A stretch of DNA of 20,488 bases from Octopus sinensis. Lineage: Eukaryota. Location: contig NW_021823973.1 of assembly GCF_006345805.1 (NCBI RefSeq), positions 1 to 20,488 of the forward strand. Direction: 5' to 3'. Positions 314-18,514 of the stretch are shown here, piece by piece. The translations under genes and the position numbers were made by a program. The notes beneath the pieces were generated by a model. The model did not search any database, was not told where the DNA came from, and worked only from the letters and a program-made list of their open reading frames with translations. The first letter of the stretch is position 1. Every line of letters starts with the position of its first letter.

Positions 314-1528
314 TTAATAAAGCAGAGAAACTTCTTCCACTACTAGAAATTGTTCCTTGCTAAAAAAACTAGTGAGTGGATATTTTCTTGTTTTTATATT
401 TTTATCGAAATCAATTTTAATTGTAACATTATCTCCAATTGTGATATCTTTTTTTCGAAAATTTTTGTTTGCGTCTTCTGTAACTTTTCTTTTATACTTT
501 TCATTATGAGTTTTTACTTCTAAGGATAATTCCGTTTCTTCCGATTCTGAGTTAATCTCTTCTTCTGCGCCTCCACATGGCAAAATATTAAAACCCGTTA
601 TTCCGTAAAATAGACTGGGTAAATAAAAAGAGACTAACCAAAATTGTGACTTTCCAGTTGCGCGATGACAAGTTATGTTGTATTTATACACCACCTTCTG
701 TAGAATTTCTCTCCACCTTATAGATTCTGTTGCGAACAAAGTCTTCCCCAACCAACGTTTGAGAGTTTGGTTATATCTTTCTATTTGTCCTTGAGATTGT
801 GGGTGCCTTGGTCTTCCATATATCGGAGTTATTTTCCAATCATCAAGAAGTTTTGAAACTTCTTTGTTGCGGAATTCCTTTCCATTGTCCGAATGAAAAT
901 AAATTGGAGGACCGACAGTCTGGAATAAACTCTCAATTGCATTATAGATGCTTTGTGATGTTTTATTCTCTAACGCGAATGACCATGCAAACTTTGTGTA
1001 TGCATCGATGACAGTAAGTATCCATTTAAAATTGTCATTATTTGCAGAATACCGCCTTAGATCTATACAGTCGGCGATAAATCTTTCGTATTTTTTTTCC
1101 ACAGAAATCATTCTGATATTTTCACAAGTACTTAAAGAGTTAAATGATTGGCACGGTATGCATTTTGATACAAAATCACGAATTATACATTGTTTAATTC
1201 CAATATATTTTTGAGAAATTAGATAACACATTTTATTGAACCCAGGATGTCCTTCATTATGTTCATCACAAAGAATAGATTGAATCCTTTCATGTTCAAA
1301 AGGACATATAACAATTTTATGTGTTCCTGATTTGGAATAAGAGAATAATTGATCGTCTGCAAAATGAAGAGTTTTACACTTTCTTCGAATTGTTCGCTTT
1401 TTGGTTTCTGTCATTCCAGGTTCATATTTTTTAGACAATAGATATAGTAAAATAGAATCATATTCTCCTTTGCTATTGATGTGTATCGAGCGCACCATGA
1501 ACAGTTTAAAATTTATTCCCAAAATCAT
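314..1528 (-). CDS. Ginger/GIN-type DDE integrase-like transposase (KRBA2/SCAND3-like); probable start is MVRSI at 1498; probable 24-nt intron at 615-638
   Basis: 404-aa ORF with integrase HHCC zinc motif (EHNEGHPG...SKCIPCQ), rve core motifs (ERFIADCIDL, WILTVIDAYTKFAW, HSDNGKEF, RPRHPQSQGQIERYNQTLK) and a C-terminal IGDNVTIKIDF segment. No gag, RT or RNase H next to it, which favours a Ginger DNA transposon over an LTR element. The C-terminus looks shorter than the paralogous remnant at 19140-19317. Confidence 0.88.
   Translation of the reverse strand: MILGINFKLFMVRSIHINSKGEYDSILLYLLSKKYEPGMTETKKRTIRRKCKTLHFADDQLFSYSKSGTHKIVICPFEHERIQSILCDEHNEGHPGFNKMCYLISQKYIGIKQCIIRDFVSKCIPCQSFNSLSTCENIRMISVEKKYERFIADCIDLRRYSANNDNFKWILTVIDAYTKFAWSFALENKTSQSIYNAIESLFQTVGPPIYFHSDNGKEFRNKEVSKLLDDWKITPIYGRPRHPQSQGQIERYNQTLKRWLGKTLFATESIRWREILQKVVYKYNITCHRATGKSQFWLVSFYLPSLFYGITGFNILPCGGAEEEINSESEETELSLEVKTHNEKYKRKVTEDANKNFRKKDITIGDNVTIKIDFDKNIKTRKYPLTSFFSKEQFLVVEEVSLLY
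615..638 (-). other. Putative 24-nt spliceosomal intron in the Ginger integrase
   Basis: Minus strand GTTAGTCTCTTTTTATTTACCCAG (GT...CAG, pyrimidine-rich). Removal turns TGKSQFWLVSFYLPSLFYG into TGKSQFCLFYG, the usual integrase TGxSPFxLxYG spacing. Confidence 0.65.
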
Positions 1529-1602: not shown

Positions 1603-2251
1603 ATAACTAATTTGTGACTCCCGTTTTCAACACGATAATAAAGGCAGTCATTTAATAGTATAAAAGATTTTGACTTGGTCAAAAGCCTTCTTTCCTAATA
1701 TCTATTTCTTGTCTTTACATCGATCCCTTGGAGAATTGACTTGATTTGATCATATTCATTGTTATTTCTTATATAACTTCTTTTGTTTTGGAAAACCAAA
1801 CGTGAACAATCCATAGTATATAGCAGCGGTTCTCAACCTTTTTTAGACTGGGGACCACTTTTGAACTATAAAATTTTGTGGGGACCACCTTAAATAAAAT
1901 AAACATTTTTTGGTATTAGCGCACAATTTTTGACCTCGTCAGGGCCAGGTTTAGACATGTTCGAATATTTATTATAAAAATAACATGAACATTATGAAAA
2001 TAACAGAAAATTTAATAGTAATTTAGTGAGATTTCTGATCTTGTTTGTTCAGAATAATTTTACTTATATCAGGCTCTATGTTCGACAAAGCTACTCGCAT
2101 ATCATCTTGTACCCGTAGTCTATTTCTATATTTTGTTTTTAGAAAAGTCAGACACGACATCGCCATTTCACAGTGATAAGTAGTGGGGAATGCAAGTATT
2201 GATTCCAATGCAGTTTTACTCAAAATGGGGAATTCTTTCGCCATCTGACAC

Positions 2252-2284
2252 CTAACAATAAAAAGTAATTATTAATGAGAATAC
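2252..2284 (-). other. Putative 33-nt intron in the hAT transposase
   Basis: GTATTCTCATTAATAATTACTTTTTATTGTTAG. Splicing gives LLDFW-CQMAKEFPIL, matching hAT FWxxxxxE(Y/F)PxL spacing. Contains an in-frame TAA. Confidence 0.8.
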
Positions 2285-3266
2285 CAAAAATCTAATAATG
2301 AAGTACATTTGAAAATAATCTGAGCAGACTGATTACATTGAAGTTCAATCAAGCTCTGCTGAAAATTGAGTTCCTGATATTCTTTAAATGAGGTCAAGAA
2401 AGGTTGAACGATCCAGTTTGGAATTGGGTCTTCAACAGGAAAATAATCATCAAATTTTGTCTTGAGATTTTCCAGATGTTTGATTATCAGACTTAGAAGA
2501 ACATTATCCGGTGGGTTGTGTCCGAGATGATATTCAAGCATTGGGAACATTGATGTTATTCCTTTTTTTATTTTCATTATCCACAATAATAACTTTTTTT
2601 AAAAGCCATTATTATTTGAGTTTGGAAAATTCGATAATTAAGTGGTCGAGATCGAATATAGTTTATCACTTTTACAATAGTGTTTAGTGTTTCTCTTAAC
2701 GACGAACACATAGTTTTTGAACAAAGTGCATATTTGTGCAATGCACAATGTCTTGTAATAATATCAGGAACCAAATCCTTAATACGAGTAACAAGTCCAG
2801 ATTGATGACCAATCATCGCAGGTGCACCATCAGTACATATAGATCCAACTTTATCTCATTGGATTTTATTCGTCTTCATAAAATTGTCAAAAATATTAAA
2901 GATGTCCTCTCCACGAGTGTGTCCATCCATCTCCAAACAAAATAAAAACTCATCAATAATATTCTCATCATCAACAAAGCGAACATAGGACACAAGCTGA
3001 CAGACGTTAGAAATGTCAGTTGACTCGTCCAATTGAATACTTATTCTGCATTTACTTTTATTGATTCTTTCAATTAATTGCTCCAGGATATCAGATGACA
3101 ATTCTGAAATTCTACGGGAAATTGAATCGTTGGATAATGGTATGTCCTTAAGTTTGGTAACTGCATCCGGACCAAACAAAATTCGAGCCATTTCAAGAGC
3201 CACTGGTTTGATTAACTTTTCACCAGAATTATGTGCAGCTTTGTTTTTTGCGATAATCATTGAGAC

Positions 3267-3296
3267 CTATTTGTTTTAGATATAAATTAAAATTAC
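3267..3296 (-). other. Putative 30-nt intron in the hAT transposase
   Basis: GTAATTTTAATTTATATCTAAAACAAATAG, phase 0, with a CTAA branch-like motif and in-frame stops. Splicing gives LEASYA-VSMIIAKNK, the Buster LEASYxVSxxIAKxK motif. Confidence 0.82.
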
Positions 3297-3677
3297 AGCA
3301 TATGATGCTTCTAATCTCGGTTATTCTTGAGATTTATTAAACCACTCAAGCTTTGGCTGTGAATCAAACTTCGTTCTTTTGACTTTAAAATATTCATGTG
3401 AGGAAGAATTTTCTGGGTGTACAGACTCTTTGTGGCGCCTAAGTTGAGAAGGTTTCAGTGAATTGTTTCCCAAAATTTTATGGCAAATCATGCATTTTGC
3501 CTTTAATTCATTATTTGGGGCAATGAATTTAGTGAATCCAAATTGTACGTAGGAATCCGACCAAAGACGACGATTCTTGTTAACCATAACTAGAATGATA
3601 AACCACGCTAATCAAATCAGATTAATTTCAATGTTTTTGATTTATACTTAATTGTACAATTAGTTTTAAATTTAATA

Positions 3678-3798
3678 CAGTGAAACCTCTCGAATCCGCT
3701 GCTTCTCGAATCCGCCGCTTCTCGAATCCGCTTGTTTTAATCAAAAATTTGAAATTTCCTATGAATGATTCTTGAATCCGCTTGTTTCTCGAATCCGC
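3678..3798 (+). mobile_element. Tigger/pogo left TIR with subterminal repeats
   Basis: TA (3676-3677) followed by CAGTGAAACCTCTCGAATCCG. TCTCGAATCCGC recurs at 3688, 3704, 3720, 3770 (1 mismatch) and 3787. Confidence 0.75.
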
Positions 3799-3894
3799 TC
3801 CTCAAGTATTATGAAAAATAATTTTTTATCTAATTGTAAGTTAAATTAATTAACATTTTAAAATTTTCATTACACGTTAAATTGTATTTTTGTG

Positions 3895-4933
3895 ATGCTT
3901 CGCTGTGTTAGACTTTCTGTCAACGAAAAAATTTCTATACTACGTTATATTTCTGACAACCCATTCGTTTCTGCACCTCAAATTTCCAGGATTGTTTCTT
4001 CACGGTTAAAAAAGAAAATTTCTCCGAGAACTATAAACGACCTTAAATCAAAATCGGACCTTTTGAATAGGACTGACATCAAAAAATTAAACCTAACGAG
4101 AATTCCAAAACTCAAATTTAATGAAATTGATGTAGCGATGATAACATGGATTAACTTAATGGAATCTAGTGGAGCAATTCTATCAGATTCGATGTTAATT
4201 GCAAAAGCTCTTAAGTTTGGAAAAAATTTTCCAGAATTTAAAGCAAGTCGTGGGTGGCTAGAAAAGTTTAAATTACGAAATGGTATCAAGTTAAGAAAAT
4301 TACACGGAAACAGTGGATCAGTAAATCATGATGAAAAATCTATTACTGATTTTAATGAAACAATGAGTTTAAAAATTGAACAATATGGATTGGACAATGT
4401 TTATAATGCAGATGAAACTGGTGTTTTTTACAAGGCGATTCCTTCCAAAAGTGTGTGTACCAAATCACGGCCTGGAATAAAGTTGTCGAAGGATCGATTT
4501 TCGTTACTATTATGCGCAAATTGTTCTGGTTCCGATAAAAGAAGGCCTGTGATGATAGGAAGATTCAAAAGTCCAAGGTGTTTTAAAAATTTCAACATTG
4601 GAAAATATGTTACCTACACCCATTCCAATAAGGCATGGATGAACCGTGAAATTTTTAACAAGTGACTCAGTGATTTTGATTGTGAACTTGCAAAGAAAAA
4701 AAGAAAAATTCTACTTGTAATAGATCAATGTCCATCTCATCAAATTATTTAATAATTATACTTAGGAAACACTTATTGAAGAGGAATCAAATGAGAAAAA
4801 AGTTGATCTCTCAGAAGCCTTCAGAGCTCTAGAGATTATTAAAACTTATGCTTCTCAGGTAAATGCAGATATAGATGATCATGAAAATATTATGCGAATT
4901 GGGGAAATGTTAAGAAAATCAATTAAAAAATAA
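3895..4933 (+). pseudogene. Tigger/pogo transposase (HTH-psq, CENP-B HTH, DDE_1), internally deleted
   Basis: RLSVNEKISIL HTH, FKASRGWLEKFKLRNGI, VYNADETGVFYK, KDRFSLLLCAN, NKAWMNREIFNK then TGA for Trp (4663) then LSDFD...LLVIDQCPSH. The QPLD region is missing; a C-terminal EAFRALEIIKTY frame ends at TAA 4931-4933. Confidence 0.9.
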
Positions 4934-4936
4934 AAT

Positions 4937-4999
4937 TGGTCCAATTTAACGCATTTAGTGGTCCAATTTAACGCATTTAGTGGTCCAATTTAACGCATT
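4937..4999. repeat. 22-bp tandem repeat, 2.9 copies
   Basis: TGGTCCAATTTAACGCATTTAG at 4937 and 4959, with a 19-nt partial copy at 4981. Confidence 0.95.
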
Positions 5000-6259
5000 C
5001 AAGCTTAGAATCTTTCCTTTTGTTATTACATCAAGCATTCGTAATTTTATCGAGGGTTAAAATTCTAAAAAAAGTAAAAAATGTCACACTCACCAGAATA
5101 AACGGTTTTTTATTGCGCTTGTGTAATTAAAATTTTCAATTTAGACATATAACACAATACAAAAAAAATATAACAAAATTGATTTAGGGTTAATTTAATG
5201 ATCCCTTTCGATATCGACAAAGAAAAATCACGGTTATCTTTGCAAAATATGCCGTATTTAAAAAAACGGTTTTTTTTTGCACCTAGTGTATAAAATATTA
5301 TTTAAATTGCCTCTCGAATCCGCCGACCACTAAAAATTTTCTGGGGACCACGGTTGAGAACCCCTGACCTAAATGATGAAATTTCAAATAATTTAACCAT
5401 TAAAAGAAACTACATCCCGAAATATTCCTTTGAATCCATTTAAATATATAAATAAAGGTAAACCAAATAAAGACAACATCGCTACATAATGGATCAACAG
5501 CGTGGTCACACGTGCCTTAATTCATTAGTTTTGCCATTGAAAATTAAATAATTAAACAATATTTAATTAAAAATGAACTATATTTTAATTAAAACACAAT
5601 TTTAAATATCATTAGTTCTCATGCATTACATAAAAATAAAGTCTCGAATAAGTTTCTGATCCAGAGGAAAAAAATTCAAATAAAAAGACTATATTTCGCC
5701 ACTTAATCCTACCAAAAATATTTAAATCCAAATAAAAATGTAATTGATATTTATTCCAGCTATCTCTTTTTGGCTTTTTATCCGCCAATTTCTGCCAGGC
5801 TCATGGCTGGAATACAGCGTCTGTGTACTCTACAGGTTTCACTGATGTCTCTTGGTGGCTACTTTCTCACTCAGTCGCTCATTAATTTCCTCAATATCTA
5901 TTAAAATAATCGTTACGTGATTCACCGCCGTAGTTGAAAGGTTGCCTTTACTGGAAACTCGATCTTGACGAATGACGCCACCATGATTCTAAGTACCAGA
6001 TGAATCTCGGATGGAGGAACGTGTAAAATCCTAGTCTAGAAACAGCCGAACGCCAATGAATAAAAATAAAAGAAATTTAAAAAGAATGAGCACCTTCATT
6101 CATTCCGGATTAATTAGATTTACTAGCATACTCGTTCTCTCTCTTGTTCTTGCAAAACTGTGTGGCTGGCACATGCAAAATCTTAGGCACATAAACACTT
6201 GTTAAACCTCCGGAGCAAACCTCAGGAATAGAATATGCAAGAAAGATTTAATCGTTGAA

Positions 6260-7470: not shown

Positions 7471-10400
7471 TTTTTTTTTTTTTTTTAAATTTATATTTTC
7501 ATTTATTAATTAATGTCAGGTAATAATTCAGAGAAGAAATTGATTTGAGAAATCAATTGAGGAGCCCGCTGCCTGTATGGAAAGCGAGTTCCCTCGGAGT
7601 ATGGCTATTCCGATCCTTTGTCTTAGCCATACTCCTTCACGAGGATCATTTTTCTTTGTGGCGAGCATTCTTCGAGTTCGCGCAAGAACTCGGCAGTCGC
7701 TGGGCCAACAGCTCCTGATGACTCAGCCGCAACAGGGGTGAATCTGTAGCGGTCCCCGAGGAAGGAATATTTTTGGTTTTAAGGTTTTCCGCGATTGAGG
7801 CAGCTGCTCCAGGTGTCTGAACCGATTTAAGGAGATTCGTGCTTGAGTAAGTATCGACGCAAGTTGCGTCCCAGACCAAAGATCGTCCGGAGTTGAAAGG
7901 AAAAGAGTCATCCCGTCAGGTCTTTTTCCATCACCTCGATCGAGACCCATGGTTCAAGCTGTGCTGGGAAGCCTGCAGCCTTCAGAGCTCTGACGATCAC
8001 GTCGTTCAGAGCGGCGTGACGTGGTCCTCTTCCGGCGGATCTCCTGCAGGATAGGGGTGCAATCCCTTCGCATCGACCGTTTTCCCGCAGCGGCATCGGT
8101 GCTCCTGGCAAACGTCTAGTCCAAGTCTTTGTCCGATTCAATCCTCAAAGAATCGTCGTCAAAAAAGTCCCGAGATTTGGGCAAGGGATTGCACCAAGCC
8201 ATGCTCCGCTCCCTCCACTTGAGGCTGACACCAGGCAAGCAAGGCGATGTTGATTTGCTTCTTTTTTAAGCCCTTCTGAAATTTTGGAGCAGACAATGTT
8301 ATCCCAGTTCCTTTGTTTCGTTGTGTCTTCGGGGATTTTGAGTCCTGACCCGTTCCAATCCCGGCAAGCTTCATCAAATGACTCATTCCAGCGAAGTCCA
8401 ATAGTGTGACGAAGGACTTGCCGTGTCAAATGGTTGCAGCTTGAGAGAGACGAAAGATATGCCGGGTACGCGACCTCCAGCGCCGATCTTAGACCGACAC
8501 CCCCAAATCCAGAGGGAAGCTTACATTGCTTCCAACCGAGTTCGTCGAAGCGGACGTTGATTAGTGACTCAACAGTTTGTTTGAGAGATTTGTCTATCGA
8601 AAGTAGACTGTCGTAATGTTCGTGGCAGGGTGAACTTCGCAGTAGGTATAAAAGCTTGGGTAGTCCGATGTTGTTTCTCATCAGGAAGAAGGATGTGTGA
8701 GAGTCGAGGCATGACAATCTTTTTGCGAGGCGAGACAATTCTTCATTTTTAGAAAGTAGATGGTTCCTGAGTTCGTCTTCACTGAGTGGACATCCAAGGA
8801 AATATAGTTTATCAACTGGCACAGTCGGGATCCCGGGAAGCAGTTCGTTGAAAACTCCTTGATAGAGAGAAAGTCGTGGTGTTTGAGTATGAGACATTTA
8901 TTAACTCTGATTTGTTAATATTGATGTCCAATCCCAAGTGTTTTAATGCGGGAAGTGCTTGACGTAAAGAATTGTATGTTTCCTCGAATGATCCTCCAAT
9001 TGTGGCATCGTCGAGATACCAGAGATTTAGTTGTGCGTCAATTGATCTCACAAATCATCAATTGTCAGGGCAAATAAGAGGGGTCCGAGCGGATCTCCCT
9101 GCTGGACACCAGTTTTTGATTTGATGATTTCATCATCAAAAACCAGAGACGTGTTTCTCCGTATGACAATTTAACAAGAGGGAAAAGCATGGGAGCCCTC
9201 TTCCAACACGTTTCCATAATGGAGTCTCTTCTGAGAGAATTGAATGCATTGGTTATGTCCAATTTGATTCCAATGCATTCGTTTGCAGTATTCTTCTGTG
9301 TGAAGAAACGCCTTGCCGCATGAACCGCTGCCTCACATCCGTTCTGGATACTAACACCCATTTGTTCTGGGAAGAACTCCGCACCGAGTGGGCGGCTCAC
9401 GAGGGTCGAAGCAATCTTCGCTGCGAGTCTTCTGAAATAGTTTCCGACCGCAATGGGGCGGATTCCTCCGTTGGGTTTTTTGAACGCGAGTAGCCTTGCG
9501 GAGAAGAGCAATTCTCTGGCATACTCCGGGATGTCGCCATTCACCATTTTCCTTATTAGGTCCGTGATCGATTTAACAAGACAGCGTCCTGCTTCCGAGG
9601 TGTAGGTGGACGTTAGGTCCTTGATATGGCCGGGGCGTAACCCATCCAAGCCTCCGCTGCTGCTAGCGGCAAAGGAAGCGATTCCGCGCCGCACTTCTGA
9701 TTCGGTAATCATAATCTCTTGGGTTCCTTCAGGATTCGAGAACTTTACATAATCACTCGGTGCACTTGGGTGCTTCTGAATTAAGGTATTCAGGACCTCG
9801 GGGGTGCTAGACAGCACGGTGTTCATCGGACGTGATAACCCGTAGGGCTGCCCGCACATCGCCCTCCAGAAGTTTCCGATTCACTCGCTCCTTCAGTTTG
9901 TTGGGGGCATCTTTGGTGAATGCTCCTCTGGTTTTGACCGCATTGGCAATAAGTGGCTGTTCAAGTATTGCGTGTATGCTATGACTGCCGTAATTCAATA
10001 TTCTTCCTTTCAGTTTCCCGGTTAAGTTTAGCCGGGGGTTTGTTTCTTTACTCTGGTTATCAGATTCCGTTGTAGGTGTTCCGAGTGCAACAGGTGCGAA
10101 GCATATAAGTTTTAGCCAGGATTCCCAGCTGTCAGAGGACAGTGCGTTGTCAATGAGGTCTGAGAGGCACGTTGCTGCGGCAATACGTGCTCCTTTTGGG
10201 ATTTTTACTGGGATTTTCCTGGCTTTCCGGAGGTTCGAGATCTTCAAGAGAATGTGGTCAGTATGTGGTGATGTAAAGTTTGGCTGGGCTGTTGTTTCCC
10301 GCCTGGGGACCTCGTTTCCAATACAAGGGGGGCACTGCCAGCTTGACAGCGTCTCGGCGCAGGCTTTGCTCATTTTTATGCAGCCCAAATGGGCGAATGA

Positions 10401-10567
10401 TTCACATGGCGTGCAGTTAATTCCAAATTTCCTGATATTCGACTGCCCACAAAAGAGACATGCCCGAGTTGTCCTCAGTGGCTTTGTTCCTCGTGCTTCG
10501 TCTTCGCTTCGTTCTTTATTTACCATCTGAGGTTTCCGTTAATCACACCACAGCACACCAATTTGAA
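7471..10567 (-). mobile_element. Apparently full-length CRE-like (RLE-type) non-LTR retrotransposon
   Basis: Short 5' UTR, single long ORF, AATAAA (7502-7507) then A16 tail (7471-7486). Imperfect flanking direct repeat TTATAAGATTTAAAATT (7447-7463) vs TTATAAAGATTTAAAATT (10568-10585). Clearly more GC-rich than the flanks. Confidence 0.85.
7528..10526 (-). CDS. CRE-like polyprotein: PHD finger, RT, CCHC finger, restriction-like endonuclease (about 1000 aa after repairing about 10 single-base indels)
   Basis: PHD C4HC3 (C23,C26,C38,C41,H46,C49,C65,C68; 10323-10460); [10 protein letters not shown]; RT motifs [36 protein letters not shown] (YLDD 9007-9018), GFGGVGL; [17 protein letters not shown]; RHAALND; GKRPDG...VWDATCVDT...KTKKY...PVAAES...[11 protein letters not shown]. 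No in-frame stops in the repaired frame. Confidence 0.9.
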
Positions 10568-16878: not shown

Positions 16879-17020
16879 AAATTCAATGAAAACTTTTAAT
16901 AAAATTCAATATCATACTTTAAAAATTTGTTGAAATTACGACAGAAGCACTTCCATGCTCGAGAAAAAAAATTTTCTCCTTCAAATTGAAATTCTTTGAA
17001 AATGGTTGTCAATATTCGTT

Positions 17021-17365
17021 CCACCTGTTTGGACACGTTCTCGCTGGGAAATCTCGCTCTATCCGCCGCCAATCCTGGGCACGCTTCGAGGCAGGCCGAG
17101 GACCGAAAGATTCTCAAGTACGGCCACCTCTCCAACTCGCTGTTCTTTACTCCAATTGCCGTGGAGTCCTCCGGGATCTTCGGCCCCAAGACACTCCGCT
17201 TCCTTCGCTCGCTCGGTCGACGGATTTCAAGAACAAGCCACGATCCAAGAGAGTATTCTTGGCTCCTGGAACGTCTGTCGATTGCTGTGATCCGAGGGAA
17301 GTTCCTGAAAAACTGGCCGGGTGTCTCGTGAGGTCATTAATTAGCTTAGCTATCTTTTTACTTTT
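17021..17365 (+). mobile_element. 5'-truncated CRE-like copy B (family 2), endonuclease C-terminus
   Basis: TCLDTFS...AEDRKILKY...FTPIAVESSGIFGP...LGRRI...LERLSIAVIRG. Positions 17239-17300 match 15760-15821 at 61/62 nt. Confidence 0.88.
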
Positions 17366-17378
17366 ATAAATCACATTA

Positions 17379-18514
17379 CAGTCAAACCCCGCCCCAACAA
17401 CAACCCCGCCTTGGGGCACCCTCGCTTTTTGGGGCGATTTTATTTTTTAGTACATTTTTCATAAATAATTTCCAAATTTGGAAATTATCAAAACCCCACT
17501 ATGGGGGACTTTACTAATTTATTTTAATATTGTTACATAATAATTTTGTGAATAATATTATTTTTGAACATTTGATATTTATCTTTGTGTAATGTCTTCC
17601 AAGATTTCTATTGAAACAAAAATTAAAATTGCAAAGTGTCTACAAACTTCTTCTGTCTACTATTTCCCGAATGAAAAAAAACATTTCTTCTTTCATTAAT
17701 ACCGGATCAGTCATTTCAAGATTAGTTCAAATAGATGAAGTTGAACAAGCTTCTAATGAAATAAATCAATTTGAAAAACTTGACGAATTAACTTTTAATG
17801 CTTTTCGTCGATTGAGGGAAGATTCCTTTTCTATTTCGGGTACATTAATCAAAGCCATCGCGAAAAAAATATCGACAAAATTTGATTCTCGAACACCTTT
17901 TAAAGCCTCAAACGGTTAGTTAGACAGATTTAAGAAGAGACATGATCTGGTTTTCAAAACCATTTCTGGTGAAAAAAAATTTAGCAGACAAAAGTAATTT
18001 GTCAAATTTTTTCTTTCAATTTGATAATTTATTGTAAACTTATGGTCATGAAAATATTTTTAATTGCGATGAAACATCTTTGTATATGTTAAAAAATTTC
18101 CTTCAAGATCATATGTAGAATCGATAGAAGCATGTCATGGTACAAAATTCAGTAAAGAAAGAGTAACAGTTCTCCTTTGCTGTAATGTAGCAGGAAAAAA
18201 ATCAAGACCTCTTGTTAGTGGAAAATACAAATCACCTCGTTGTATGAAAAGTTGGCTTAATTATATCTGAACATATATTTTGATTGTGAAAAATTCGGTA
18301 TTTTATATTTAGCGTCAAAAAATTCCTGGATGAACAGAGAAATTTTCAAAATGTGGCTATCAAAAATTAACGACGACTTTCTCTCACAAGATAGAAAAAT
18401 AATTTTAATAATGAATAATGCTACATGCCATTCTTTATTGGAATACACAAATGTTAAAATGTTTTTTCTTCCGAAAACACAACATCTTTGATTCAACCTC
18501 TAGACGGTATAATA
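17379..18514 (+). mobile_element. Second Tigger/pogo element, decayed and 3'-truncated
   Basis: TA-CAGTCAAACCCCG left end (17377-17391). ATG at 17592. FKASNG(TAG)LDRFKKRH, IFNCDETSLY, KERVTVLLCCN, WMNREIF...IMNNATCH, TTSLIQPLDGII; cut off at 18515. Confidence 0.85.

What the first reader, a model, noticed from the sequence alone, without database searches (positions are those of the whole stretch)
2252..3296. Two ultra-short introns (30 and 33 nt) in a Buster hAT transposase
Seen: two AT-rich GT...AG segments with in-frame stops, whose removal exactly restores LEASYAVSMIIAK and DFWCQMAKEFP. With the 24-nt Ginger candidate this suggests DNA transposons here carry miniature introns, and all three lengths are multiples of 3. 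Inference: the elements have adapted to, or gained introns in, a host with a tiny-intron spliceosome. That would mark long vertical residence and could block horizontal transfer to hosts that cannot splice such introns.
Basis: partly seen in the sequence, partly recalled or inferred. Interest (0 to 1): 0.72.

Follow-up and report, generated by a model that had tools for sequence, protein, structure and literature searches.

The report
Tiny introns in a Buster transposon
The window holds a dead copy of a recently active Buster-type jumping gene whose transposase gene is interrupted by 27-33-base introns, which fits a host whose own genes have 23-26-base introns: most likely a dicyemid parasite of octopus, although sister copies are filed in databases under Octopus sinensis.

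Summary
On the minus strand, a 30-nt segment (3296..3267) and a 33-nt segment (2284..2252) both start GT, end AG and contain in-frame stops. Removing them restores LEASYAVSMIIAK and DFWCQMAKEFP.

They are family features, not damage to this copy. Four other independent insertions, 98.8-99.5% identical, carry the same segments plus a third of 27 nt, which the window copy lost in a ~295-bp deletion. In the family consensus, all four in-frame stops lie inside the 30- and 33-nt segments. After removal, a 590-aa transposase remains that aligns without gaps to 22 Buster homologs at all three junctions. One copy (L004) still has an intact exon set.

Cellular genes beside sister copies, one SK-channel-like and one Raptor-like, have 26- and 23-nt GT..AG introns and very divergent proteins. 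The 24-nt Ginger segment in the window is likewise an exact 8-residue insertion relative to 27 homologs.

Among animals only dicyemids and myxobolid myxozoans have such introns. The sister contigs are labelled Octopus sinensis, the host of Dicyema japonicum, so parasite DNA in the octopus assembly is the likeliest source.

Splicing was not shown with RNA. I rate this a new member of a known kind, of moderate interest.

The parts
1816..1823 (-). 8-bp target site next to the 3' TIR (CTATATAC as read on the element strand; fits nnnTAnnn)
   Evidence: All five copies have different 8-bp flanks with TA at positions 4-5. In L001 (GGCTATAC) and L004 (TTCTAAAT) the 8 bp are duplicated on both sides.
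1824..1838 (-). 3' terminal inverted repeat of the Buster element (CAGCGGTTCTCAACC on the + strand)
   Evidence: Similarity among all five copies ends exactly here.
2023..3587 (-). Transposase coding region of this copy, now a pseudogene. Exons are interrupted by mini-introns 1 and 2 and carry the lesions listed below.
   Evidence: The best hit is 97% identical ('ZBED8-like [Octopus sinensis]'), followed by FAM200C/ZBED5/ZBED8/SCAND3-like Buster relatives with E-values down to 1e-120.
2252..2284 (-). Mini-intron 2 of the finding (third in the gene): 33 nt, GTATTC...GTTAG, phase 2, two in-frame TAA
   Evidence: It is identical in all five copies, and removing it gives a gap-free ...DFW|CQ... 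alignment with 22 homologs.
2594..2600 (-). A7 homopolymer that shifts the frame. Copies L004 and L005 have A8, which keeps the frame (MAFKKKLLLW).
2619..2620 (-). Junction of an internal deletion of about 295-297 bp specific to the window copy. The deletion removed the RW-motif region and the 27-nt mini-intron (GTAAAATTTTTATTAATTTATTTAAAG).
2856..2858 (-). TGA nonsense codon private to this copy (TGG, Trp, in the other four copies)
3267..3296 (-). Mini-intron 1: 30 nt, GTAATT...AATAG, phase 0, two in-frame stops
   Evidence: It is present in all five copies, with private changes in three: L001 T>C, L004 last G>T, L005 a 2-bp deletion.
3321..3323 (-). TAA nonsense codon private to this copy (AAA, Lys, in the other copies)
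3588..3677 (-). 5' untranslated, subterminal part of the element
   Evidence: aligned to L001 9584-9673 and to L004.
3678..5324 (+). pogo/Tigger-like insert that splits the 5' end of the Buster element. It has HTH_Tnp_Tc5 and DDE_1 domains, is internally deleted, and has TGA at a Trp codon.
   Evidence: The left TIR is CAGTGAAACCTCTCGAATCCGC; the right end is not a clean inverted TIR.
5325..5366 (-). 5' terminal 42 nt of the Buster element, with TIR CAGGGGTTCTCAACC
   Evidence: It matches L001 9388-9429. The 8 bp beyond it do not repeat the target site seen on the 3' side.
314..1528 (-). Neighbouring Ginger-like stand-alone integrase ORF (rve and H2C2 zinc-binding domains).
615..638 (-). 24-nt mini-intron candidate in the Ginger-like gene (GTTAGTCTCTTTTTATTTACCCAG, phase 2, no in-frame stop)
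   Evidence: It encodes WLVSFYLP, an exact 8-residue insertion relative to all 27 aligned homologs.

Best explanation
The element is a Buster-group hAT DNA transposon that was active recently in a genome whose spliceosome handles introns of roughly 23-33 nt.

Its transposase gene has three real U2-type GT..AG mini-introns of 30, 27 and 33 nt, in phases 0, 1 and 2. They must be spliced out to give a 590-aa transposase, because two of them carry in-frame stops. The window copy is a decayed insertion of this family that still shows introns 1 and 3 of the gene.

The closest relatives in other organisms are uninterrupted at these positions. The introns were therefore most likely gained, or shrunk to host size, in the lineage of this tiny-intron host.

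The host is most likely a dicyemid (Dicyema-like) kidney parasite of Octopus sinensis. Its DNA appears to have been assembled and annotated as part of the octopus reference genome.

Shown: the anatomy, conservation among copies, dependence of the open reading frame on removal, collinearity with homologs, and tiny introns in neighbouring cellular genes.

Inferred: actual splicing, intron gain, and the dicyemid identity of the host.
For: (1) Five independent insertions were compared: the window, L001 (same locus as L003), L002, L004 and L005. They have different flanks and 8-bp nnnTAnnn target sites, duplicated on both sides in L001 and L004. All share the mini-segments at the same positions, and the copies are 98.8-99.5% identical.

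(2) The family consensus, with the A8 run, has exactly four in-frame stops over 1863 nt, all inside the 30- and 33-nt segments. Removing the segments leaves an open 590-codon frame. Copy L004 has no indel and no premature stop in its exons. Its only lesion is a change in the last base of intron 1.

(3) The spliced consensus aligns without a single gap to 22 Buster homologs at all three junctions.

(4) All segments start GT and end AG. The chance of this is about 7e-7 for the three Buster segments. Their 5' ends are all GTA, matching the reduced 'GTa ... AG' signal reported for D. japonicum (PMC13644364).

(5) Host context:
- The SK-channel-like gene in L003 has a 26-nt GT..AG intron. Removing it shifts the frame so that the protein aligns to solved SK/IK channels over residues 13-409 of 410.
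- The Raptor-like gene in L004 has two 23-nt GT..AG introns. The alignment to Raptor 6zpn_A is gap-free across one of them.
- The SK-like protein has no close relative anywhere. The only near-identical hit is its own O. sinensis record, and the next best hit is 33-38% identical. This fits the fast-evolving proteins described for dicyemids (PMC2222250).

(6) Within the window itself, a second and unrelated transposon, Ginger-like, has a 24-nt GT..AG segment that is an exact 8-residue insertion relative to 27 homologs.

(7) Literature:
- Dicyema introns average 26.2 +/- 1.9 nt (PMC2222250).
- The median is 27 nt, with about two-thirds under 30 nt (PMC6543705).
- Among animals only dicyemids and myxobolids have introns under 30 bp (PMC13644364).
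- D. japonicum lives in O. sinensis, and its genome is 36.7% GC and 49% repeats (PMC6736024).
- The loci studied here are 32-38% GC and transposon-dense.
Against: - No transcript evidence was obtainable. No spliced product of this family is in the protein collections searched, and exact look-ups of window ORFs found nothing.
- The Buster introns (27-33 nt, 82-93% A+T) are longer and much more A+T-rich than the three cellular introns seen (23-26 nt, 43-58% A+T).
- The window has no cellular gene. Its attribution to the tiny-intron genome rests on the near-identical Buster copies, two further shared repeats and the Ginger intron.
- No dicyemid reference sequence could be compared, so the dicyemid identity is circumstantial.
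- The majority state of the homopolymer is A7 (3 of 5 copies), which breaks the frame. I assume A8 is ancestral, or that A7 is partly a long-read homopolymer error.
Confidence: 0.78

Rival explanations
1. The element sits in real octopus chromosomal DNA. The Buster and Ginger families entered the octopus by horizontal transfer from its dicyemid parasite and kept the donor's mini-introns as a signature. In the octopus they would be spliced poorly or not at all, and would be mobilised in trans.
For: All sister contigs are deposited and RefSeq-annotated as Octopus sinensis, some of them long (up to 522 kb). Parasite and host are in intimate contact (PMC6736024). The family has few, young copies, and no close copy is labelled from another octopus species.
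Against: Two of the four independent sister loci carry cellular genes with 23-26-nt introns within 10 kb of the element. The surrounding DNA, not only the transposon, is therefore of the tiny-intron type. The SK-like gene has no ortholog in any other cephalopod. Transposition to five or more sites needs a working transposase, which needs these introns to be spliced.
Confidence: 0.08
2. The segments are not spliced. They are small junk insertions that killed the master gene, and the family is a non-autonomous lineage moved by some other transposase.
For: There is no RNA evidence. Every copy except L004 has inactivating lesions. Most copies have the frame-breaking A7 run.
Against: Three independent random insertions would not all begin GT and end AG (about 7e-7). 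They would not be the only interruptions of an otherwise open 1.77-kb frame, and they would not match the intron size of neighbouring cellular genes. An unrelated transposon in the window shows the same feature.
Confidence: 0.06
3. The host is a tiny-intron organism other than a dicyemid, for example a myxozoan or a ciliate associated with octopus tissue.
For: Tiny introns also occur in myxobolid myxozoans, ciliates and microsporidia (PMC13644364). No dicyemid sequence was compared directly.
Against: The standard genetic code is used. TAA ends the Buster ORF exactly where homologs end, which argues against ciliates that read TAA as Gln. The transposon repertoire is animal-like, and the SK-like protein matches animal SK/IK channels best. 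Myxozoan genomes are reported as relatively transposon-poor, whereas D. japonicum is 49% repeats and lives in O. sinensis.
Confidence: 0.06
4. Assembly or sequencing artefact: the segments do not exist in the organism.
For: The sister contigs come from a long-read assembly with evident 1-nt indels.
Against: The same 27-33-nt segments occur at the same positions in five separately assembled loci plus a duplicate contig (L003 = L001). The 33-nt one is identical in all of them. Long-read errors do not create identical 30-nt insertions.
Confidence: 0.01

Closest known systems
Buster-group hAT transposons (TcBuster, AeBuster1) and their domesticated relatives ZBED5/ZBED8/FAM200/SCAND3
   Same: - Full-length homology with E-values down to 1e-120.
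- An N-terminal BED-type zinc-finger signal and a C-terminal hAT dimerisation signal.
- Conserved LDESTD, CTDGA, RWLSRG and CE motifs.
- 8-bp target sites fitting nnnTAnnn, and short TIRs starting CAG.
   Different: The gene is interrupted by three mini-introns of 27-33 nt. The 22 relatives aligned here are continuous at those positions. As far as I know (from memory), the characterised active Buster elements have uninterrupted ORFs.
Intron-containing hAT elements (BuT2 of Drosophila buzzatii with a five-exon transposase gene, PMC3942097; from memory also Ac and Tol2)
   Same: These are hAT transposases that need host splicing, with intron size and signals resembling those of the host.
   Different: Those introns are of ordinary length, tens to hundreds of nt. 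Here they are 27-33 nt, at or below the roughly 30-bp limit long assumed for animals (PMC13644364). BuT2 belongs to a different hAT group.
Dicyemid mini-introns in cellular genes (Dicyema acuticephalum 26.2 +/- 1.9 nt, PMC2222250; Dicyema sp. median 27 nt, PMC6543705; D. japonicum, PMC6736024 and PMC13644364)
   Same: They share the length class, GT..AG ends and a reduced 'GTa' 5' signal, and the encoded proteins are divergent. The flanking SK-like and Raptor-like genes here have 26- and 23-nt introns.
   Different: Published dicyemid introns sit mostly at ancient conserved positions in cellular genes. These sit in mobile elements at positions with no counterpart in relatives, so they are probably gains. 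The Buster ones are somewhat longer and much more A+T-rich. I found no description of introns in dicyemid transposons in the papers searched.
Tiny introns of ciliates, where introns of 3n length tend to carry in-frame stops so that unspliced mRNA is destroyed (Paramecium; recalled from memory, Jaillon et al. 2008)
   Same: These are tiny introns, and two of the three Buster introns are 3n with in-frame stops.
   Different: The 27-nt Buster and 24-nt Ginger introns are 3n without stops. The sample is far too small to claim the same selection, and the organism here uses the standard code and looks like an animal.

Membership tests
hAT superfamily, Buster group | 8-bp target-site duplication with consensus nnnTAnnn (a Buster signature; criterion recalled from Arensburger et al. 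2011) | tested here: met
   The flanks are CTATATAC, GGCTATAC, CTATACAC, TTCTAAAT and AGCTAAAC, all with TA at positions 4-5. The 8 bp are duplicated on both sides in L001 and L004. The window copy's 5' flank does not repeat it.
hAT superfamily, Buster group | Short terminal inverted repeats | tested here: met
   CAGCGGTTCTCAACC is present at both ends of L001 and L004. In the window it lies at 1824-1838 and, as CAGGGGTTCTCAACC, at 5366-5352.
hAT superfamily, Buster group | Closest homologs are Buster-type transposases or Buster-derived genes | tested here: met
   FAM200C-, ZBED5-, ZBED8- and SCAND3-like proteins at 36-46% identity, with E-values from 1e-84 to 1e-120. No phylogenetic tree was built.
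hAT superfamily, Buster group | BED zinc finger and hAT C-terminal dimerisation domain (Pfam) | tested here: inconclusive
   zf-BED scores 18.5-20.6 bits against a cut-off of 20.6. Dimer_Tnp_hAT scores 19-21.3 bits against 21.4. The reference homologs P0002 and P0010 score just as weakly, so these models are poor for this clade.
hAT superfamily, Buster group | Catalytic D, D, E and the RW motif conserved | tested here: met
   The consensus has SIQLDESTD, ICTDGAPAM, SEIRWLSRG and TTYHCEMAMS, matching P0002 and P0010. The catalytic roles are assigned from general knowledge of hAT transposases, not tested. No solved structure matched by sequence.
U2-type spliceosomal intron | GT at the 5' end and AG at the 3' end | tested here: met
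   This holds for 3 of 3 Buster segments, the Ginger segment and 3 of 3 cellular segments. Each has exactly one GT..AG placement among its 2-4 equivalent placements.
U2-type spliceosomal intron | Removal restores the reading frame and collinearity with intron-less homologs | tested here: met
   Buster; Ginger; Raptor-like and SK-like.
U2-type spliceosomal intron | Present in the functional ancestor of the gene, not private to one copy | tested here: met
   Shared by five independent insertions.
U2-type spliceosomal intron | Absent from the mature mRNA | not testable with these tools
   No transcript data for this organism could be reached.
U2-type spliceosomal intron | Branch-point signal | tested here: inconclusive
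   There are A-rich stretches a few nt upstream of the AG (CTAAAACAAATAG, TTTAAAG). This fits the weak A run described for D. japonicum, but A-rich sequence is expected anyway in 82-93% A+T segments.
Dicyemid (Dicyema-like) nuclear genome as the source | Cellular genes with introns of about 20-30 nt | tested here: met
   A 26-nt intron in the SK-like gene (L003 4748-4773) and 23-nt introns in the Raptor-like gene (L004 18194-18172 and 17837-17815). This covers only three introns in two genes.
Dicyemid (Dicyema-like) nuclear genome as the source | Highly divergent protein sequences | tested here: met
   The best non-self hit of the SK-like protein is 33-38% identical, with no cephalopod ortholog. 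The Raptor-like fragment scores only 125-140 bits against solved Raptors.
Dicyemid (Dicyema-like) nuclear genome as the source | Sequence identity to a Dicyema reference (genome RDEW00000000, transcriptome GHAB00000000) | not testable with these tools
   No dicyemid nucleotide collection is searchable here. The accessions come from PMC6736024.
Octopus nuclear genome as the source | Orthologs in other octopus species, and ordinary long introns | tested here: not met
   The SK-like gene has no close relative in any other cephalopod. Its introns and those of the Raptor-like gene are 23-26 nt. The only octopus link is the label of the deposited contigs.

The most novel reading that the evidence does not exclude
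The Buster and Ginger families really do reside in octopus chromosomes as well as in the parasite, having crossed from dicyemid to host. In that case the mini-introns would be a built-in donor signature that reveals the direction of transfer. They would also largely disable the elements in a host that cannot splice 24-33-nt introns, so intron size would act as a natural barrier to transposon spread between a parasite and its host.
Probability: 0.07. Interest if true: 0.85.

Novelty: new member of a known kind. Interest (0 to 1): 0.5.

Why it matters
1. It gives clean, sequence-level examples of probable intron gain in mobile elements. The lineage concerned is known for having some of the shortest introns of any animal, and its described introns are mostly ancient ones that shrank. 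A young transposon family with three introns absent from relatives makes the origin of mini-introns directly testable.

2. An element whose transposase can only be made by a spliceosome that handles introns of about 30 nt is tied to such hosts. This is a concrete way in which host gene architecture could limit horizontal transposon transfer.

3. There is a practical consequence. Contigs and RefSeq proteins filed under Octopus sinensis ('ZBED8-like', 'small conductance calcium-activated potassium channel protein 2-like') look like parasite sequences. That matters for octopus gene catalogues, for studies of transposon content, and above all for any screen for host-parasite horizontal transfer, where such contigs would produce false positives.

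Tried and rejected
- Alternative genetic code. TGA falls at a Trp position and TAA at another conserved position in the window copy. Rejected: the other four copies have TGG and AAA there, so these are private nonsense mutations. The ORF also ends at TAA exactly where homologs end.
- Ciliate-type TA-bounded eliminated sequences. Excision at TA...TA in segment 1 would remove 28 nt and break the frame, by inspection. Rejected.
- A fourth intron at the A-run (a 32-nt GT..AG candidate). It would delete KLLLWIMKIKKG, which is homologous to KISLWKRRIQGG in P0002. Rejected in favour of an A7/A8 length difference.
- Tc1-like copies in the window and in L002. They show ordinary 1-nt frameshifts and stops, with no mini-introns.
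- The window's GC-rich LINE as a host marker. The best hits are only 42-46% identical. The named cephalopod hits are all O. sinensis, which does not discriminate.
- Exact look-ups of three window ORFs to find the source record or sequencing samples. Nothing is on record.
- Rfam scan of the window: no RNA family.
- Solved-structure search with the spliced transposase: no match by sequence.
- Pfam on the full consensus: sub-threshold only.
- The Raptor-like gene near L004 18060-18000. It has an in-frame TAG and a 15-residue excess, but I found no convincing GT..AG solution, so it is left unresolved.
- Literature searches for dicyemid DNA in octopus assemblies, or for introns in dicyemid transposons. 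Nothing was found in the library.
Full report
**1. What is at the coordinates**

The finding lies in a gene on the minus strand, with ATG at 3587 and stop TAA at 2025..2023. Both described segments exist exactly as stated.
- The first is 30 nt at 3296..3267: GTAATTTTAATTTATATCTAAAACAAATAG, with two in-frame stops.
- The second is 33 nt at 2284..2252: GTATTCTCATTAATAATTACTTTTTATTGTTAG, with TAA TAA in frame.

Deleting them yields LEASYAV|SMIIAK and DFW|CQMAKEFP.

The protein is a Buster-type hAT transposase. A search of 5.8 billion proteins gives one 97%-identical hit, 'ZBED8-like, partial [Octopus sinensis]'. Hundreds of FAM200C/ZBED5/ZBED8/SCAND3-like proteins follow at 36-46% identity, with E-values down to 1e-120. 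Pfam gives only borderline BED-finger and hAT-dimerisation signals, and it does the same for reference homologs.

The window as a whole is a mosaic of transposable elements:
- a Ginger-like integrase at 314-1528(-);
- the Buster copy;
- a pogo-like insert at 3678-5324(+);
- a 50%-GC LINE at about 7500-10540(-);
- Tc1-like and further LINE fragments.

It contains no cellular gene.

**2. The window copy is dead, but the segments are not part of the damage**

The 97% hit led to a second genomic copy, L001. Its cluster mates led to three more independent loci, L002, L004 and L005. L003 is the same locus as L001, 99.97% identical with flanks included. All are contigs of the assembly deposited as Octopus sinensis (GCA_006345805.1).

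The five copies are 98.8-99.5% identical. Each ends at the same TIR (...GGTTGAGAACCGCTG) and is followed by a different 8-bp site with TA at positions 4-5. The 8 bp are duplicated on both sides where both ends are present: L001 GGCTATAC, L004 TTCTAAAT. These are therefore separate, recent transpositions of one Buster family.

Relative to the others, the window copy has:
- a private TAA at 3323..3321;
- a private TGA at 2858..2856;
- an internal deletion of about 295-297 bp at 2620/2619;
- an A7 run at 2600..2594, where L004 and L005 have A8.

In contrast, the 30- and 33-nt segments are in all five copies, and the 33-nt one is identical in all. The four copies without the deletion also share a third segment of 27 nt, GTAAAATTTTTATTAATTTATTTAAAG.

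**3. Are they introns?**

Four lines of evidence bear on this.
- The family consensus with A8 is 1863 nt from ATG to stop and has exactly four in-frame stops. All four lie inside the 30- and 33-nt segments. Removing the segments leaves an open frame of 590 codons.
- Copy L004 has no indel and no premature stop in its exon set. Its only visible defect is G>T at the last base of intron 1.
- The spliced consensus aligns to 22 Buster homologs with no gap at any of the three junctions. The 27-nt segment has no stop, and leaving it in would add 9 residues where all homologs have a fixed 13-residue spacing.
- All three segments start GT (in fact GTA) and end AG. They are 82-93% A+T against 66% for the exons, and they lie in phases 0, 1 and 2. 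Allowing for the 3-4 equivalent placements of each boundary, the chance that all three are GT..AG is about 7e-7.

I conclude that these are spliceosomal introns of the element's master gene. What is missing is RNA. No spliced product is present in the collections, and no sample-level look-up succeeded.

**4. Whose genome is it?**

Octopus genes are not known for introns of this size, so I examined the flanks of the sister copies.

In L003/L001, 5 kb from the element, lies a gene annotated as 'small conductance calcium-activated potassium channel protein 2-like'. Its annotated ORF stops at 4792. However, a 26-nt GT..AG segment at 4748-4773 (GTAGCATACCTGGTCATTCTCTTTAG) shifts the frame precisely into the rest of the channel. 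The spliced protein aligns to solved SK/IK channels over residues 13-409 of 410. This protein has no close relative in any database entry other than itself. The next best hit is 33-38% identical, which is not what a real octopus ion channel should show given the other sequenced cephalopods.

In L004, 6-7 kb from the element, a Raptor-like gene runs through several frames. Two 23-nt GT..AG segments, at 18194-18172 and 17837-17815, restore the frame. The alignment to Raptor 6zpn_A is gap-free across the second one.

Within the window itself, the Ginger-like integrase contains the 24-nt segment GTTAGTCTCTTTTTATTTACCCAG at 638..615. It encodes WLVSFYLP, an exact 8-residue insertion relative to all 27 aligned homologs.

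So two unrelated transposons in the window, and two cellular genes beside sister copies, all show GT..AG introns of 23-33 nt.

**5. Which organism?**

According to the literature, among animals only myxobolid myxozoans and dicyemids have introns under 30 bp (PMC13644364). Published figures for Dicyema fit:
- Introns average 26.2 +/- 1.9 nt, and the proteins are highly divergent (PMC2222250).
- Another Dicyema has a median intron of 27 nt, with two-thirds under 30 nt (PMC6543705).
- In D. japonicum the splice signals are reduced to 'GTa' and 'AG'.
- The D. japonicum genome is 67.5 Mb, 36.7% GC and 49% repeats, and the animal was collected from the renal sac of Octopus sinensis (PMC6736024).

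The loci here are 32-38% GC and transposon-dense. The standard genetic code and the animal-type transposons and channel argue against a ciliate.

The most economical reading is that these 'Octopus sinensis' contigs are dicyemid DNA co-assembled with the host, and that the window comes from that same tiny-intron genome. It could have been taken from the octopus record or from a dicyemid assembly, and I cannot tell which. I could not compare the sequences with a Dicyema reference, so this step is inference. I put it at about 0.7-0.8.

**6. Mechanism proposed**

The element is transcribed from its own promoter. The host spliceosome removes the three mini-introns, and the 590-aa transposase cuts and pastes the element at nnnTAnnn sites. 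That transposase has the BED-type N-terminus, the LDESTD / CTDGA / RW / CE motifs and the hAT C-terminal domain.

The relatives are continuous ORFs at the three positions. Many were called as single ORFs on 2-4-kb metagenome contigs. The introns were therefore probably gained, or acquired and then shrunk, in the host lineage.

All three introns are followed by exon GT (...AG|GT), so each could have arisen by insertion next to a pre-existing GT. This is a hint only.

**7. Comparison with what is known, and novelty**

hAT transposases with introns are known, for example BuT2 with five exons (PMC3942097). Dicyemid mini-introns are also known. I did not find either of the following described in the searches made:
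- mobile-element genes carrying host-sized mini-introns in this lineage;
- dicyemid-type genes inside the O. sinensis reference assembly.

I therefore rate this a new member of a known kind, of moderate interest for three reasons:
- it makes intron origin in a tiny-intron animal testable;
- it suggests a splicing-based restriction on where such transposons can function;
- it flags probable mislabelled sequences in a reference genome.

**8. Loose ends**

- All four transposon introns are multiples of three (24, 27, 30, 33), while the three cellular ones are not (26, 23, 23). The nominal chance is 0.012, but the test is post hoc and the sample is tiny.
- The transposon introns are far more A+T-rich than the cellular ones.
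- In the window copy, the sequence beyond the 5' TIR does not repeat the target site.
- One stretch of the Raptor-like gene remains unresolved.

Noticed in passing
L003 3779-5037 (= L001 about 3723-4980); L004 18374-17204 (minus): Cellular genes on contigs deposited as Octopus sinensis have 23-26-nt GT..AG introns and very divergent products: an SK-channel-like gene, annotated in truncated form by RefSeq, and an unannotated Raptor-like gene. These contigs look like parasite (dicyemid-type) DNA inside the octopus reference assembly.
   Followed up: partly
window 615-638 (minus), inside the ORF at 314-1528: The Ginger-like integrase has a 24-nt GT..AG segment encoding WLVSFYLP, an exact 8-residue insertion relative to 27 homologs. 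It has no in-frame stop, so retaining it would only add 8 residues.
   Followed up: yes
L001 10001-13146 (gene model of P0001 / XP_029654905.1): The RefSeq model is chimeric. It starts at the Met just after mini-intron 1. Its last ~50 residues are not encoded by the Buster copy and appear to be spliced in from downstream DNA, where fragments of a second hAT lie at L001 12212-13218.
   Followed up: partly
L004 8669-11026: This copy of the Buster element has both TIRs and a TSD on both sides. After removal of the three mini-introns, its 590-codon frame has no indel or stop. The only lesion seen is G>T at the last base of intron 1. It is the best candidate for a recently active copy.
   Followed up: partly
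L001 9388-9514 and 9515-9641; L004 about 8690-8942: The 5' subterminal region of the element, about 127 nt and including a degenerate copy of the TIR (AAGCGGTTCTCAATC), is tandemly duplicated.
   Followed up: no
window 3678-5324: A pogo/Tigger-like insert splits the Buster 5' end. It has the left TIR CAGTGAAACCTCTCGAATCCGC, several TTCTCGAATCCGC repeats at about 3695-3800, an internally deleted transposase with TGA at a Trp codon, and a right end that is not a clean inverted TIR.
   Followed up: partly
window 5367-5374 versus 1816-1823: The 8 bp outside the 5' TIR of the window copy do not repeat the 8-bp site on the 3' side, unlike in L001 and L004. This suggests a rearrangement after insertion, or that the two ends belong to different insertions.
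   Followed up: no
window about 7500-10540 (minus) and 16900-17420: A 45-50% GC non-LTR retrotransposon, with a PHD-finger ORF and a reverse transcriptase broken by frameshifts, sits in about 30% GC surroundings. Its best relatives are only 42-46% identical, and the only named cephalopod hits are 'uncharacterized protein [Octopus sinensis]'.
   Followed up: partly
window 615-638, 2252-2284, 3267-3296; L001 10794-10820: All four transposon mini-introns are multiples of 3 (24, 33, 30, 27 nt) and 67-93% A+T. The three clear cellular mini-introns are 26, 23 and 23 nt and 43-58% A+T.
   Followed up: partly
L004 about 18060-18000 (minus): The Raptor-like gene has an in-frame TAG and a 15-residue excess relative to solved Raptor. 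No convincing GT..AG segment of matching length was found. This may be an assembly error or an atypical intron.
   Followed up: partly
window 2594-2600 and the same site in the other copies: The homopolymer is A7 in three copies (frame broken) and A8 in two (frame kept). Together with the scattered 1-nt indels in L002 and L005, this may partly reflect long-read homopolymer errors rather than real mutations.
   Followed up: no
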